Shown here one piece after another: positions 3,405 through 10,513 of a stretch of DNA of 10,513 bases. A model generated the notes under the pieces. It was not told the origin of the DNA. It did not search any database and worked only from the letters and a program-made list of their open reading frames with translations. The stretch is taken from positions 1-10,513 of the IMG/VR virus record IMGVR_UViG_3300005977_000041; one strand, 5' to 3'. The position numbers and the translations under genes are program-made. Within the stretch, counting starts at the first letter, position 1. Each line of letters starts with the position of its first letter.

Positions 3405-3680
3405 ATGGGCAAATTAGCTTTTAGGTTATATATTTCTATAATGCTTTCAATTGTAATACTTAATATACTTTTAATATTTTCTGAAGGAATTTTATCTAAA
3501 AATCTACAAAATATAGTTTTATATTCCGCAATTACATCAATTTTATTAGCAATAATTTTCACATGGATAATAGATTTGATAGATGATTTAGATACAAGAA
3601 TTAATAAACTTGAACTAGAAATTGAAAGATTAAAAAGAGAAAGAAGACAAGAAATATATATGTCAGATAACGAAAAATAA
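3405..3680 (+). CDS. Two-TM membrane protein with C-terminal coiled coil (paralog 1, 91 aa)
   Basis: Two hydrophobic helices then DTRINKLELEIERLKR. Confidence 0.85.
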   Translation: MGKLAFRLYISIMLSIVILNILLIFSEGILSKNLQNIVLYSAITSILLAIIFTWIIDLIDDLDTRINKLELEIERLKRERRQEIYMSDNEK

Positions 3681-3692
3681 AGATGAGAAAAA

Positions 3693-3935
3693 ATGGAAAG
3701 AGAATTTCGTGAAATAATAGTTTTCTTAATTTTTTTAGCTTTAATGTCTTTAGCTTTAATAGTCATGTCATTAGGAATTCTTGTAAAAAATATGCCAATA
3801 GTTATAATATCAACATTTTTTGCATCTGGAATTTTTGCAATTATATATGTAGCAATTTATGATATCTTTGCAGATATTTATGATGAAATTGATGAACTTA
3901 AAGCAGAAATTGAAAGATTAAAAAGAAAGAAATGA
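3693..3935 (+). CDS. Two-TM membrane protein with C-terminal coiled coil (paralog 2, 80 aa)
   Basis: Two hydrophobic helices then YDEIDELKAEIERLKR; colinear with paralog 1. Confidence 0.85.
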   Translation: MEREFREIIVFLIFLALMSLALIVMSLGILVKNMPIVIISTFFASGIFAIIYVAIYDIFADIYDEIDELKAEIERLKRKK

Positions 3936-5958: not shown

Positions 5959-7266
5959 ATGAGTAGTTCAAATCACCTTCTTGAAAAGATAAAATCTCAT
6001 TCTTTTTTTTATAATCCAAGAGATACAGAAAGAGTTTTAAATATAATTCTCTCTGGAAAACAAATAGAAGACTCAAAAAAAATTGAAATTTTAAAAGCTT
6101 ACAAACGCGGAATTGATCAACAATATTTTCAGTCTTATTTATTATATAATAATGAAGTAAAATTTATTTCAAAAATTGTTAATTTTAAAGTTAAAGATGA
6201 TGAAATAATAGCAAAATTTCAAAATGGTTTTATTGCAAATTTCGATCCACATTTTATAGCTGATAATCCTGAAGATTTCTATAATTTGATAACTAGCTAT
6301 ATGTTTGTAAAAATTAGAAAAGGTATAAATGGCTGGTACATTAGCGATATTTATTCAATTGAGCCACCTAACAATTATGAAATTGCAAAAGAATTATTTG
6401 AATTAGCAAGTTCAGAATATTCAACTTATGCACTTTTATTGCAAAGTTTTGGATATGACCCGACTAGAATGGAAATAAATGATATTTTCCTCTTCTTGCC
6501 GAGATTATTTCCACTTTTCAAATCCCCAATTACAAAACGCCAAATTAATTATATTGAAATTTCTAATAGAGGAACTGGTAAAACTACAACTTTTATGATT
6601 TTACAAGAAGTTTTCAATTTTAGATATTATACAGAAGCTCCAACTTATGCCAATTTAGTATATGATGCTAGAAATAATATGTATGGAGCTGTATTTTTAT
6701 CAAATGGATTGATATTTGATGAAATTCAAAATTGGAAAGATGGTTTTTCAACAAAAGAACTAAATACTATAAATTCAACTCTGTCAACTGGAATTGAAAA
6801 TTGTATTTGGACTCGCGGTGCTGGAACAGAATCAAAATCTGCAACTATTCAAAAATGTATTCCAATTATTTACGCTGGAAATCCATATTCTTATACAATT
6901 AATAAATTAGTAAATCCAGATATAGAAGATTATCTACAAAATTATGAAATATTTACATCTGCAATTTTAGATAGAATTCATATTATTCAATTAGCAATTA
7001 AGAAAACTTATGATAAAATTATAAATGCAAGAGTATTATATCCTTCAATTTTAAAAGCATTAATTGAATTAATTCAACAGAAGATAAATAGCATTAATAA
7101 TTATGTAAATTGCGAAAATTTAGAATCTAGGAGACAAGAGCAAAGTATCGATATTCAAATTTTATTACAAGCTCTAGATATAGATCTACAAATTGGAAAA
7201 GTACAAAATGAAGAAATTTGTAATAGAATAATAAATTTAATGAGATTTAGCAATTTAGGTGGTTGA
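5959..7266 (+). CDS. AAA+ ATPase, putative helicase (SIRV2 gp18 / ORF436 family)
   Basis: Walker [10 protein letters not shown], Walker B LIFDE, sensor I YAGN, arginine-finger SAILDR. Confidence 0.93.
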
Positions 7267-8433: not shown

Positions 8434-8682
8434 TTATTGTTTTAAGTAAACTCTTTGCTTTGAACGACCGCTTTCCGGATTAAGTTCATAACGAATTTCT
8501 ATCAGCCCTTTTTTCTCTAAATTCTGTAACCTCTTATTGACAACTCCATCGTACTTACTAGCCCACGAAAAATGCCGAATAACTTCATCCTTCCATATTC
8601 CATTTGGAAACTGACTCAAAAAATTCAATACTGCTTTTTCTTTTCTCCCGATTCGAATTTTTTTCTTTTCTGTCTGACTCAT
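8434..8682 (-). CDS. Winged helix-turn-helix DNA-binding protein (82 aa)
   Basis: EKAVLNFL...VNKRLQNLEKKGLIEIRY...GRSKQRVYLK is a wHTH pattern. ATG 8682 preferred because the track's extension runs through the promoter. Confidence 0.85.
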   Translation of the reverse strand: MSQTEKKKIRIGRKEKAVLNFLSQFPNGIWKDEVIRHFSWASKYDGVVNKRLQNLEKKGLIEIRYELNPESGRSKQRVYLKQ

Positions 8683-8729
8683 TTTATCACTAATATCTAA
8701 TATGCAAAAACTTATATTTAAAGTTTTCT
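8682..8729 (-). promoter_or_regulatory. Conserved strong promoter/RBS block, copy 1
   Basis: AGAAAA-C-TTTAAATATAAGTTTTT...AGTGA; 42/48 identical to 9694-9741. Confidence 0.85.
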
Positions 8730-8795
8730 TCAAACTTTTACGTTTTCATTTTACGTTATCTAAATTCCTTCAAATTAGAAATAGTATGACAAACT

Positions 8796-8950
8796 TGAAA
8801 AAAATAAAACAAAAAAATAGAAAATAGAAAGTTAAAACTAAAAAAGAAAAAAATTAACTTTATTTTTGCAAAACATCAAAATAAGAAGCAGAAAAATGTT
8901 ACGTAAAAAATGAAAAAATCGAAAAATAAAAAAGAAAGATAAAATCGACA
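8796..8950 (-). terminator. Long A-rich spacer (U-rich 3' tail of the upstream minus-strand gene)
   Basis: Repeated A4-A7 runs immediately 3' of the stop at 8951. Confidence 0.55.
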
Positions 8951-9331
8951 TTACTCTTTAATTAAATCAATTGGATAATGTTTTTTCAAAATATAATATA
9001 ATTTGAAAAATATCGGCTCAGCATAATCAATATTTGATTCTGGTAATTTTTTCAAAATGTTAATAATATCTTCCGAAACATCGTATTCTTTAAAATATCT
9101 TAATTTTAAAACATTTTTGATAATTGAATAATCGTAAAAATAATATGCTTTATTATTTAAAACAAGAAGACATTTATATCCATTACTATCAGGAAAACTA
9201 GTAATATATTTTGTTTCATAATCAGAAACAAAAATTATAGCATTAATTAAATGATCATCTGTAATCTTTCTTAATTTTTCAAAAGTATTTTTTATATCTT
9301 CATCATATATTTGAACTTTATTTTCACTCAT
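8951..9331 (-). CDS. Hypothetical protein (126 aa)
   Basis: ATG 9331 preceded by GGAGG and a TTTATA-TTTGTCA promoter; the track's TTG start at 9352 is less likely. Confidence 0.8.
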   Translation of the reverse strand: MSENKVQIYDEDIKNTFEKLRKITDDHLINAIIFVSDYETKYITSFPDSNGYKCLLVLNNKAYYFYDYSIIKNVLKLRYFKEYDVSEDIINILKKLPESNIDYAEPIFFKLYYILKKHYPIDLIKE

Positions 9332-9435
9332 TTTCTTTCCTCCAAAAAACAACTAACTAGATATGACAAATATAAAAACATCTTTGGCTTTCAGTTTCAA
9401 AATTTCTTAAAATGGCAGAATTATTATTTGAAATT

Positions 9436-9523
9436 TGAAAAAAATTATTGATAAAAATAGATAATAAAGACAACAAAAATATAAAAATAAAAGAAAAAAT
9501 TGAAAATTAAAAAAAGAATAACT
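9436..9523 (-). terminator. A-rich spacer (U-rich 3' tail of the Gp1-like gene)
   Basis: A-runs 3' of the stop at 9524. Confidence 0.5.
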
Positions 9524-9691
9524 TTACCAACAATCAGACATATACTTCTTGACTTTTTTCTCACTAATTCCTAAAAATTGAGCTATTTGTTGAATTGAAT
9601 AACCTTGTTTTATTAATTGATGAACTAACGAAACTTCATCATCTCTTGAACTTATATAATATCTTGAATTTCCGACTTGTACGACTTTCAT
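9524..9691 (-). CDS. Rudivirus Gp1-like HTH DNA-binding protein (55 aa; SIRV1 ORF55/56a, SIRV2 ORF83 family), not in ORF track
   Basis: Manual translation MKVVQVGNSRYYISSRDDEVSLVHQLIKQGYSIQQIAQFLGISEKKVKKYMSDCW; QV...RYY..S.DD.VS..H.L.K.GY..QQIA..LG.SE.KV..Y...C signature; strong promoter and GGTGA RBS. Confidence 0.92.
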   Translation of the reverse strand: MKVVQVGNSRYYISSRDDEVSLVHQLIKQGYSIQQIAQFLGISEKKVKKYMSDCW

Positions 9692-9693
9692 CT

Positions 9694-9741
9694 TTTTATC
9701 ACCAATATAACATATGTAAAAACTTATATTTAAACTTTTCT
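9694..9741 (-). promoter_or_regulatory. Conserved strong promoter/RBS block, copy 2
   Basis: AGAAAA-G-TTTAAATATAAGTTTTTACATATG...TTGGTGA. Confidence 0.85.
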
Positions 9742-9831
9742 CTCTCTTTTTATCTTTTGATTTTTCGAAACTTTTAACGTTAAACCTCTTAACTTACAAT
9801 TTCTGTTAACTTTGAAATTTGATTTGAAAAC

Positions 9832-9965
9832 TGAAAAAAATTAAACATAGAAATAGAAAATAATGAGAATAAAACTAAAAAGCTAAAAAATAAAATTATA
9901 AAACTAGAAAAATAGAAAATATAAAATAGAAGATAATAAAAATAAAAATAAAAAAAACAATTAAC
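9832..9965 (-). terminator. Long A-rich spacer with AAAATA(G)/AAAACTA short repeats
   Basis: About 130 nt almost entirely A-runs, 3' of the stop at 9966. Confidence 0.55.
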
Positions 9966-10304
9966 TTACATTATTTGCATGCTTTTCCAGCCAACAGGGT
10001 AACTAAAAACGTATACTATTTGTTGTTTTTGACTTTGTGAATTATATTTAATTCTTTCTTCAATCAACACTATTATTGTATCGCTTTTTGGAATAATCGC
10101 ATATTCAAATTCTCTAGTTTCATCATTAATGTCATTAGTACTCATTAATATCAATTCATATTCACCATAAACTTGTCTAATCTTTATATACCCATCTCTT
10201 CCTCTGTACTCCTTAACTATCAAAAAATATTTGGACTCATCTTTGCCTTCATCAATCGCCTTCTTTATTAATTCACTGATTTGTTCATCAGTTAAGTTTT
10301 TCAT
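9966..10304 (-). CDS. Hypothetical protein (112 aa), candidate early gene
   Basis: ORF track; GGTGA RBS and promoter block copy 3. Confidence 0.85.
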   Translation of the reverse strand: MKNLTDEQISELIKKAIDEGKDESKYFLIVKEYRGRDGYIKIRQVYGEYELILMSTNDINDETREFEYAIIPKSDTIIVLIEERIKYNSQSQKQQIVYVFSYPVGWKSMQIM

Positions 10305-10308
10305 CTTT

Positions 10309-10353
10309 TCACCAATTTTACATATGTATCTCCCCCTTTATAAAGTTTTCTCT
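10309..10353 (-). promoter_or_regulatory. Conserved strong promoter/RBS block, copy 3 (diverged middle)
   Basis: Ungapped alignment with 9699-9743: AGAGAAAA-C-TTTATA...TACATATG...ATTGGTGA. Confidence 0.75.
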
Positions 10354-10363
10354 ACTTTTTTAC

Positions 10364-10407
10364 ATCTCTATCTCTCTATCTCTCTCCATTAACTCTCTCT
10401 ATAGAGA
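10364..10407. repeat. TC/TCTCTA simple repeat with palindrome TCTCTATAGAGA (10396-10407)
   Basis: Seen directly in sequence. Confidence 0.6.
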
Positions 10408-10513
10408 ACGTGCAAATTCTGTCTCTCCAATTTCTTTCAACGTTGCAGAGATAAATTGTTTTGGAACGGTGAAATCGCGTAAAAAAACCTATTTCAAACC
10501 TGACTCTAAATTA

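What the first reader, a model, noticed from the sequence alone, without database searches (positions are those of the whole stretch)
9966..10304. 112-aa uncharacterised protein behind the early-type promoter: best new anti-defence candidate
Seen: outermost gene of the window, mixed alpha/beta with a distinctive EYAIIPK...VYVFSYPVGW C-terminus, promoter block copy 3 and GGTGA RBS. It does not resemble the AcrID1 or AcrIII-1 (DUF1874) sequences as I recall them. Inference: a separate family of early inhibitor.
Basis: inference. Interest (0 to 1): 0.6.

Follow-up and report, generated by a model that had tools for sequence, protein, structure and literature searches.

The report
Early rudivirus gene of family ADG.05
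This is a real 112-residue gene at the end of a hot-spring rod-shaped archaeal virus genome; it belongs to a small virus-only family that a 2024 paper already listed as a predicted, still untested anti-defence gene (ADG.05), so it is a sensible candidate but not a new one.

Summary
The ORF at 9966-10304 (minus strand, 112 aa) is real. It has its own promoter block, a GGTGA ribosome site and a T8 terminator. It is under purifying selection (dN/dS 0.07-0.24).

The window is a fragment of a Yellowstone-type Usarudivirus, about 88% identical to SIRV8 and SIRV9. In those viruses the ortholog is gp01 or gp03, the outermost gene.

I also found no relation to AcrIIIB1, AcrIIIB2 or AcrIA3.

The family is not new. 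Bhoobalan-Chitty et al. 2024 (PMC11065993) list these orthologs as ADG.05. All 11 homologs carry the early regulatory motif. AcrNET says yes and DeepAcr says no. I found no experiment on it.

New here:
- An exhaustive profile search finds only 27 clusters, all 107-148 aa.
- AlphaFold2 (pLDDT 90.6) gives an N-terminal helix pair plus a seven-strand Ig-like beta-sandwich with no convincing PDB match (best Z 6.0).
- No polar residue is invariant across the family, and this protein has no Cys or His.
- The conserved residues lie in turns that, by strand order, share one pole. The opposite turns carry the variation and indels.

Most likely it is an immediate-early, Aca8-controlled protein that binds a host factor without catalysis. 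The target is unknown.

The parts
9966..10304 (-). CDS of 112 aa (13.3 kDa, pI 5.1, no Cys or His), a member of family ADG.05 / PHROG 10536
10309..10313 (-). Shine-Dalgarno-like GGTGA, 4 nt before the ATG
   Evidence: read directly; the TTGGTG part also matches at the Aca8 gene
10320..10327 (-). Palindrome ACATATGT between the TATA box and the ribosome site, at about the expected transcription start. Inferred to be an operator for the Aca8-type repressor.
   Evidence: the same element lies at 9710-9717 in front of Aca8; also present in front of SIRV1-XX ORF134b; the operator role is inference
10337..10352 (-). Core promoter: purine-rich BRE-like GAGAAAAC followed by the TATA box TTTATAAA
   Evidence: three matches at 8715-8730, 9727-9742 and 10337-10352; resembles the published SIRV2 early consensus
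10301..10377 (-). Third copy of the 77-nt early regulatory block
   Evidence: family D3; alignment
9950..9957 (-). T8 run starting 9 nt after the TAA stop, followed by more T runs. This is an archaeal-type terminator, so the gene is a single-gene unit.
   Evidence: read directly; the terminator role is from general knowledge of archaeal oligo-T termination
9524..9691 (-). Neighbouring 55-aa HTH protein, an Aca8 homolog and the presumed repressor of the block. Its own copy of the block is at 9691-9767.
   Evidence: (45% identity to the C-terminal 55 aa of SIRV2 ORF83b)
8434..8682 (-). 82-aa winged-helix protein (family ADG.02 of the same paper) behind the first copy of the block at 8679-8755

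Best explanation
The gene is a new sequence variant of the published rudivirus/lipothrixvirus family ADG.05. It is the outermost gene of a Usarudivirus genome and forms a single-gene unit. The unit has a strong BRE/TATA promoter within a regulatory block shared with the adjacent Aca8 repressor gene, a short leader with GGTGA, and an oligo-T terminator.

By analogy with SIRV2 genes that carry this kind of block, it would be transcribed immediately after infection and then shut off by Aca8. The ACATATGT palindrome at the transcription start is the likely site of that repression.

The product is a small, mildly acidic, soluble protein. It has an N-terminal helix pair packed on a seven-strand Ig-like beta-sandwich and no catalytic-type residues. 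The most likely action is stoichiometric binding to a host protein, probably a component of a defence system.

The contact surface is probably the conserved pole. That pole is formed by the turns carrying Y46-G47-E48, I71-P72-K73 and G105-W106-K107. The opposite, indel-rich pole is free to vary.

Shown: the gene, the promoter block, family membership, the fold model, the conservation pattern along the sequence, and accessory terminal status.

Inferred: that the conserved turns share one pole (deduced from strand order, not measured on coordinates), early timing, Aca8 control, binding, and any anti-defence role. The target is unknown.
For: Family membership:
- tblastn gives 69-73% identity to SIRV5-10 terminal genes, and 30-37% to isolates V3/V60/V65, ARV2 and SIRV1-XX.
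- PHROG 10536 matches at E 4e-45.
- Those same genes are listed as ADG.05 with motif prevalence 11 of 11.

Promoter:
- Three block copies lie in the window.
- The block is conserved in front of the orthologs in SIRV9, SIRV5 and SIRV1-XX.

Accessory, fast-evolving gene:
- The family profile finds nothing in the whole SIRV2 and SIRV3 records.
- Identity to SIRV9 is 64-77% for the four terminal genes, against 88-97% for most of the genes further inside (two small ORFs, 67% and 78%, fall lower).
- dN is 0.18, against 0.02-0.04 for two core genes, with dN/dS still 0.07-0.24.
- In five IMG/VR loci the gene lies 152-1559 nt from the contig end.

Binder rather than enzyme:
- Only G47 and P72 are invariant. 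L28, F100, G105 and W106 are nearly so. This protein has no Cys or His.
- The confident model is an Ig-like sandwich.
- No Pfam, NCBIfam or PADLOC family matches.

Conservation pattern: per-residue entropy and indel counts are.
Against: - No member of the family has been tested. No RNA data exist for this virus or for any ADG.05 carrier that I could find.
- DeepAcr scores the family as not an Acr.
- In the Yellowstone SIRV host-range study, the viruses that escaped CRISPR immunity did not share a set of variable genes. Two escapers, SIRV4 and SIRV11, lack this gene.
- The conserved glycine, proline and tryptophan residues could be purely structural turn and core residues rather than a binding surface.
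- The same promoter logic also picks up regulators such as ADG.02, so the block does not by itself show an inhibitor.
Confidence: 0.55

Rival explanations
1. It is an early host-takeover protein unrelated to immunity. It would bind and redirect a host replication, transcription, cell-cycle or membrane factor, as other rudiviral terminal genes are thought to do.
For: The features are the same as for the best explanation: early-type promoter, small non-catalytic binder fold, accessory status. Nothing links it specifically to a defence system. DeepAcr is negative. There is no correlation with CRISPR escape.
Against: - The patchy distribution and fast amino-acid change fit an arms-race gene better than a takeover factor aimed at conserved host machinery.
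- It lies beside Aca8 in an island of predicted anti-defence genes.
Confidence: 0.25
2. It is a chagasin-like (Inhibitor_I42) protease inhibitor. Three loops at one pole of an Ig-like sandwich would plug the active site of a host protease.
For: - The top structural neighbour in three searches is the Entamoeba cysteine protease inhibitor EhICP2 or the I42 family: Z 5.8-6.0, Foldseek probability 0.84-0.90, ESM Atlas TM 0.48.
- The family's conserved residues lie in three turns that should share one pole.
Against: - Z is below 8 and rmsd is about 5 A, within the tool's stated background for unrelated sandwiches.
- Ig, adhesin and DsbD-N domains score almost the same.
- No Pfam PF09394 hit in any of 32 members.
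- The chagasin loop motifs, as I recall them (NPTTG, GxGG, RPW), are absent from the sequence.
Confidence: 0.05
3. It is a second regulator of the early gene set, an Aca-like protein that binds DNA.
For: It shares the regulatory block with two DNA-binding proteins, Aca8 and the winged-helix ADG.02. The promoter method is known to pick up regulators.
Against: - No HTH, RHH or zinc motif; no Pfam hit.
- Net charge is negative, pI 5.1.
- The model is a beta-sandwich, not a DNA-binding fold.
Confidence: 0.05
4. It is a virion or replication protein. This is the outcome the reader named as refuting the anti-defence idea.
For: None found.
Against: - No similarity to capsid, Rep, nuclease or SSB families, all of which are recognisable elsewhere in the window.
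- Absent from SIRV2, SIRV3, SIRV4 and SIRV11, so it is not essential for the rudivirus life cycle.
Confidence: 0.03

Closest known systems
ADG.05, predicted anti-defence gene family of Bhoobalan-Chitty et al. 2024 (PMC11065993). Members: SIRV5/6/7/9 gp01, SIRV8 gp03, SIRV10 gp49, ARV2 gp39, AFV7 gp14, isolates V3/V60, SIRV1-XX ORF134b. Equivalent to PHROG 10536.
   Same: - Homologous over the full length (69-73% identity to the Usarudivirus members, 30-37% to the rest).
- Same terminal position.
- Same single-gene organisation behind the virus's shared BRE/TATA regulatory block.
- Same length class.
   Different: - It is a new sequence variant: 73% identity to the nearest named virus, 96% to unnamed metagenome proteins.
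- In this genome it sits directly beside Aca8. The five genes that separate the two in SIRV9 are missing.
AcrID1 (SIRV3 gp02; PDB 6EXP and 6THH; relative SIFV0014, 2H36)
   Same: A small, early, terminal rudivirus/lipothrixvirus protein behind the same kind of promoter. It presumably acts by binding rather than by catalysis.
   Different: - No sequence or profile similarity.
- The family profile finds nothing in SIRV2 or SIRV3, which carry several AcrID1 paralogs.
- 6EXP, 6THH and 2H36 are not among the rows shown by any fold search.
AcrIII-1 (DUF1874 ring nuclease, SIRV1 gp29)
   Same: Encoded by rudiviruses and of similar size.
   Different: - AcrIII-1 is an enzyme with a Pfam family; this protein has no Pfam hit and no histidine.
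- DUF1874 genes rarely carry the early motif (prevalence 0.13).
Chagasin / Inhibitor_I42 cysteine protease inhibitors (EhICP2, PDB 3M86 and 3M88)
   Same: The best, though weak, structural neighbour. It is an Ig-like sandwich of about 100 residues whose function rests on three loops at one pole.
   Different: Z is only 5.8-6.0 at about 5 A rmsd. There is no sequence or profile match. This family has an extra N-terminal helix pair. The chagasin loop motifs are absent.

Membership tests
ADG.05 (PMC11065993) | Protein sequence similarity to the listed members (families were defined by sequence clustering) | tested here: met
   - tblastn E 1e-51 to 3e-6 to SIRV5-10, V3/V60/V65, ARV2 and SIRV1-XX.
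- Profile hits E 4.6e-42, 9.7e-41 and 5.7e-30 in SIRV1-XX, SIRV9 and ARV2.
- The listed accessions are the same genes.
ADG.05 (PMC11065993) | Preceded by the virus's shared regulatory sequence with a strong BRE/TATA promoter | tested here: met
   Third copy of the 77-nt block, with BRE/TATA at 10337-10352. The block is conserved in front of the orthologs.
ADG.05 (PMC11065993) | Single gene, not part of an operon | tested here: met
   It has its own promoter, and a T8 run follows 9 nt after the stop. A 274-nt AT-rich spacer separates it from the next gene.
ADG.05 (PMC11065993) | Actual anti-defence activity, which is the claim behind the family name | not testable with these tools
   I found no experiment for any member. 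No RNA runs hold the sequence.
AcrID1 | Sequence or profile similarity to SIRV3 gp02 and its relatives | tested here: not met
   - BLASTP E 2.3.
- hhalign probability 0.8%.
- phmmer against PDB does not find 6EXP.
- No profile hit in SIRV2 or SIRV3.
AcrID1 | Fold of 6EXP / 2H36 | tested here: not met
   These entries are absent from the rows shown by Foldseek PDB, VIA wide and VIA re-alignment. Caveat: no direct pairwise superposition was possible.
AcrIII-1 (DUF1874) | Match to the DUF1874 Pfam family | tested here: not met
   Zero Pfam families at E <= 1. No DUF1874 match among the 32 family members scanned at E <= 0.1.
AcrIII-1 (DUF1874) | Catalytic histidine of the ring nuclease (from my knowledge of the family) | tested here: not met
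   The protein has no histidine.
AcrIIIB1 / AcrIA3 / AcrIIIB2 | Similarity to SIRV2 gp48, SIRV2 gp47 (ORF112) or SIRV3 gp40 | tested here: not met
   The family profile finds no match anywhere in the SIRV2 and SIRV3 records. hhalign against SIRV2 ORF112 gives probability 0.2%.
Chagasin / Inhibitor_I42 | Pfam PF09394 match and the conserved loop motifs | tested here: not met
   No Pfam hit. The motifs, as I recall them, are not in the sequence.
Chagasin / Inhibitor_I42 | Same fold | tested here: inconclusive
   It is the top neighbour, but at Z 5.8-6.0, rmsd 5.1-5.3 A and TM 0.36-0.48. That is within the background for unrelated sandwiches.

The most novel reading that the evidence does not exclude
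ADG.05 may be a structurally new class of archaeal-virus defence inhibitor. In this reading, an Ig-like beta-sandwich inserts a conserved three-turn pole (YGE, IPK[ST], GWK) into the active or assembly site of a host defence protein, the way chagasin plugs proteases. Its target would be one not yet known to be inhibited in Sulfolobales, such as a type I-A or III-B subunit, or a non-CRISPR system.
Probability: 0.12. Interest if true: 0.7.

Novelty: new member of a known kind. Interest (0 to 1): 0.3.

Why it matters
Only a few archaeal anti-defence proteins have been tested. AcrID1, AcrIIIB1, AcrIIIB2 and AcrIII-1 were the four known Acrs before 2024. Since then there have been a type I-A inhibitor, AcrIA3/AcrIA4 in a preprint, and one toxin-antitoxin inhibitor.

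ADG.05 is one of the few predicted families that spans both Rudiviridae and Lipothrixviridae. Every known copy carries the early motif. That makes it a good family to test next.

This window does not add a new idea. It adds a new variant, evidence of purifying selection, a confident fold model, and a concrete surface to mutate. It also shows that the promoter-based argument can be rediscovered from raw sequence alone.

Tried and rejected
- **Homodimer prediction** (two copies): no verdict (score 0.16, mark 0.42). Not evidence either way.
- **Weak profile hit to RmlC-type sugar epimerases** (E 0.011 over about 65 residues): rejected. No cupin appears in any fold search, and the match covers only part of the sandwich.
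- **NCBIfam Taw2 and PDB KNL1/Spc105 or PH0793 hits**: E 0.016-0.3, far below cut-offs. Treated as chance.
- **Relation to neighbouring families:** hhalign against SIRV9 ORF4 (ADG.07) and against the window's 126-aa neighbour gave probabilities below 1%.
- **ESM Atlas feature search:** no usable hit.
  - With the close alignment, IMG/VR gave only 5 loci.
  - The species-genome collection gave none. That scan is pattern-limited, so it does not exclude distant host copies.
- **Profile search of host genomes by taxonomy:** not possible, because the window is a virus record and the metagenome loci are not held.
- **RNA evidence:** none of the 16 runs that hold the stretch is RNA.
The result shows presence and population variants only.
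- **Genetic code and the large search:** no alternative genetic code was used. The large representative search was used once, because the word search and family scans left the function open.

Full report
**What the window is.** It is a 10,513-base IMG/VR virus record, estimated 34% complete. It matches the left end of Yellowstone Sulfolobus islandicus rod-shaped viruses in reverse orientation. Identity is about 88.5% over 92% of its length to SIRV9, and similar to SIRV8.

Recognisable core genes are present:
- the 134-aa major capsid protein
- a 335-aa protein in the position of the gene annotated as glycosyltransferase in SIRV9
- a Rep-like 114-aa protein
- the PHA01746-like 133-aa protein
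- a 435-aa ATPase
- a 207-aa Cas4-like nuclease

**The observation.**
- The ORF at 9966..10304 on the minus strand encodes 112 residues and is the outermost gene.
- On the coding strand, GGTGA lies 4 nt before the ATG.
- A 77-nt block occurs three times, at 8679-8755, 9691-9767 and 10301-10377. Each copy lies directly in front of a minus-strand gene: an 82-aa winged-helix protein, a 55-aa HTH protein, and this gene.
- The block holds a purine-rich stretch followed by a TATA box (three matches to the pattern).
- Two of the three copies also hold the palindrome ACATATGT followed by TTGGTG.
- A T8 run starts 9 nt after the stop codon.
- So the gene is a self-contained unit: promoter, short leader, ORF and oligo-T terminator.

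**Is it a real gene?**
- Orthologs in SIRV5 to SIRV10 are 69-73% identical at E 1e-51 to 3e-49.
- Nei-Gojobori dN/dS is 0.24 against SIRV9 and 0.07 against SIRV5.
- Contigs from four independent hot-spring metagenome runs carry 35 listed single-base variants inside the gene. Fifteen are synonymous and 20 are mostly conservative replacements. None is a stop or a frameshift.
- AlphaFold2 with a 32-sequence alignment gives mean pLDDT 90.6 and pTM 0.77.

**What family is it?**
- Pfam, NCBIfam and PADLOC give nothing meaningful.
- PHROGs gives phrog_10536, function unknown, at E 3.8e-45.
- The word search found 23 proteins, all 63% identical or more. Most come from short metagenome contigs, plus SIRV5 gp01, SIRV8 gp03 and a SIRV10 protein.
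- In SIRV5 and SIRV9 the ortholog is ORF1, the first gene of the record.
- More distant tblastn hits are the isolates V3/V60/V65 (37%), ARV2 (30%) and ORF134b of SIRV1 variant XX (30%).

**Already published.** Bhoobalan-Chitty et al. 2024 (PMC11065993) predicted anti-defence genes in archaeal viruses. In SIRV2 such genes are expressed immediately after infection.

Their Supplementary Data 1 lists these orthologs as family ADG.05:
- SIRV5, 6, 7 and 9 gp01
- SIRV8 gp03
- SIRV10 gp49
- ARV2 gp39
- AFV7 gp14
- isolates V3 and V60
- SIRV1-XX CAG38864

Further details from that paper:
- The family has 11 homologs and all 11 carry the motif, a prevalence of 1.0. That is as high as Aca8 itself.
- AcrNET calls it an Acr and DeepAcr does not.
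- ADG.05 is not mentioned in the main text. The proteins tested there were SIFV2 gp09-17 and SMV1 gp44.
- I found no later paper that tests it.

It is a rediscovery, and 'inhibitor' remains a prediction.

**Relation to known archaeal Acrs.**
- AcrID1 (SIRV3 gp02, PDB 6EXP/6THH, with SIFV0014 2H36 as a relative) shows no similarity. BLASTP gives E 2.3 and hhalign gives 0.8% probability.
- A profile of the family finds nothing in the complete SIRV2 and SIRV3 records. It finds one copy each in SIRV1-XX, SIRV9 and ARV2.
- SIRV2 and SIRV3 encode AcrID1 paralogs, AcrIIIB1 (gp48), AcrIA3 (gp47, coincidentally also 112 aa), AcrIII-1 and AcrIIIB2 (SIRV3 gp40). This result excludes a detectable relation to all of them.
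- hhalign against SIRV2 ORF112 gives 0.2%.
- DUF1874 is excluded by the empty Pfam result and by the absence of any histidine.

**How large is the family?** An exhaustive HMM search of 1.84 billion cluster representatives, using a profile of 20 close members, found only 27 clusters at E <= 0.001. All are 107-148 residues long. The extra length is a variable, acidic N-terminal extension.
- Contexts I looked at are short viral-type contigs.
- In one 29-kb contig the gene lies 3.8 kb from an end, among genes without Pfam hits.
- In the five IMG/VR loci the gene lies 152 to 1559 nt from the contig end.
- A pattern-limited scan of 185,579 species genomes found no close relative.

**Fold.** The model has helices at 6-19 and 22-26 and seven consecutive antiparallel strands.
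- Foldseek against PDB has no hit at E <= 0.001.
- The Foldseek-independent search of 48,161 representative chains has a best Z of 5.8. The re-alignment of Foldseek's top 1000 has a best Z of 6.0.
- In both, the best match is the chagasin-type cysteine protease inhibitor EhICP2, at about 5 A rmsd over 83-85 residues. Ig domains, adhesins and DsbD-N follow within 1 Z unit.
- The ESM Atlas gives TM 0.48-0.50 to Inhibitor_I42 and DsbD_N clusters.
- By the tool's own calibration this is background for a common sandwich arrangement. I call it Ig-like and nothing more.
- In BFVD, independently predicted models agree with the fold: SIRV10 TM 0.77, ARV2 0.80 and a betalipothrixvirus protein 0.82. AFV2 ORF119 (TM 0.61, E 3e-5) may be a remote relative.

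**Clues to mechanism.**
- Across 32 diverse members only G47 and P72 are invariant. L28, F100, G105 and W106 are nearly invariant.
- No polar residue is invariant across the family. This protein has no cysteine or histidine, and its pI is 5.1. An enzyme or a metal site is unlikely. It is also not acidic enough to suggest a DNA mimic.
- Per-residue entropy shows a clear pattern:
  - The low-entropy residues sit at the start of strand 1 and in the turns between strands 2-3, 4-5 and 6-7 (Y46-G47-E48, I71-P72-K73, G105-W106-K107).
  - The turns between strands 1-2, 3-4 and 5-6 (residues 34-41, 55-66, 81-96) carry the highest entropy and nearly all insertions and deletions.
- In an up-and-down antiparallel sandwich, alternate turns lie at opposite poles. 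So the family should have one conserved pole and one free pole. This is an inference from strand order. I could not inspect coordinates.
- The conserved pole is my candidate binding surface. It could also be purely structural.

**Evolutionary behaviour.**
- Most of the genes further inside the window are 88-97% identical in protein to SIRV9. Four small ORFs fall lower: 44% (partial match), 67%, 78% and 82%.
- The four terminal genes are 64-77% identical: the winged-helix protein, the 126-aa protein, Aca8 and this gene.
- This gene's dN is 0.18, against 0.04 for the capsid and 0.02 for the 435-aa ATPase. dS is comparable to the capsid.
- The gene is missing from SIRV2, SIRV3, SIRV4 and SIRV11.
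- This fits the published view that variable terminal genes, not core genes, carry the host-virus arms race in SIRVs.
- The same paper notes that viruses escaping CRISPR immunity did not share a set of variable genes. Two of those escapers lack this gene. That is mild evidence against a simple anti-CRISPR role.

**Verdict.**
It is a distinct family behind an early-type promoter, and it is unrelated to the Acrs named.
- It is a new member of a family already published as a predicted anti-defence gene. Its function is untested.
- My confidence is about 0.9 that it is an ADG.05 member in an Aca8-type early unit. It is about 0.5 that the function is anti-defence. The target cannot be named from sequence.

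- The reads tool was given 2,114 letters.
- No alternative genetic code was used.
- No broken toxin or effector gene, and no virus of animals, people or crops, is involved.

Noticed in passing
window 9692-9965 compared with L007 (SIRV9) 9786-11823: In SIRV9, five genes (ORF2-ORF6, about 2 kb, including members of ADG.08, ADG.17 and ADG.07) lie between Aca8 and the ADG.05 gene. In this window the two are direct neighbours, separated only by a 274-nt AT-rich spacer. The terminal island is a cassette-like mosaic.
   Followed up: partly
window 8743-10334 (tables 5 and 5c): Metagenome contigs show joints whose ends fall in or next to the repeated promoter blocks and AT-rich spacers, for example 9702 to 10334 with 21 other letters between, 8844 to 9509, and 9768 back to 8955. 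These may be alternative gene orders in the virus population, created by recombination at the shared blocks. They may also be assembly-graph branches at repeats. The flanks are only 21-37 nt, so this is weak.
   Followed up: no
window 10317-10513: Summed contig depth rises about ten-fold or more here in all four runs (for example X1: about 2,500-41,000 inside the gene, against 205,000-450,000 here). The stretch upstream of the gene, towards the genome terminus, seems to be shared by many more virus genomes than the gene itself. It aligns to SIRV9 and SIRV5 up to about 10495.
   Followed up: partly
window 10396-10407: A perfect 12-nt palindrome, TCTCTATAGAGA, lies about 45 nt upstream of the BRE/TATA of this gene. 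It is fully conserved in SIRV9 and partly in SIRV5. It occurs once in the window and is absent from the other two block copies. It may be an extra operator or a terminal-region element.
   Followed up: partly
window 3405-3680 and 3693-3935 (+): Two adjacent small proteins (91 and 80 aa) both have a hydrophobic N-terminal half and a similar charged coiled-coil tail ending in ...IERLKR.... They look like tandem paralogs. RefSeq annotation of the matching SIRV9 region includes a pyramid-forming protein.
   Followed up: no
window 5959-7266 (+): The only Pfam match of the 435-aa core protein is the ATPase domain of the BREX Lon-like protein BrxL (PF13337, E 1.9e-14). So a core rudivirus ATPase shares a domain family with a bacterial defence protein.
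   Followed up: no
window 8951-9331 (-): The 126-aa gene between Aca8 and the winged-helix gene has a different upstream region: a weaker TATA, a GGAGG ribosome site and no shared block. Its SIRV9 ortholog (gp08) is not in the published ADG list. Yet it diverges as fast as its neighbours (77% identity to SIRV9).
   Followed up: partly
window 8434-8733 (-): The mechanical ORF call starts at a TTG and gives 99 aa. The promoter block lies inside that extension, and homologs start at the internal ATG. The real product is therefore the 82-aa protein (8434-8682). This is the same kind of over-long annotation that the 2024 paper corrected for Aca8.
   Followed up: partly
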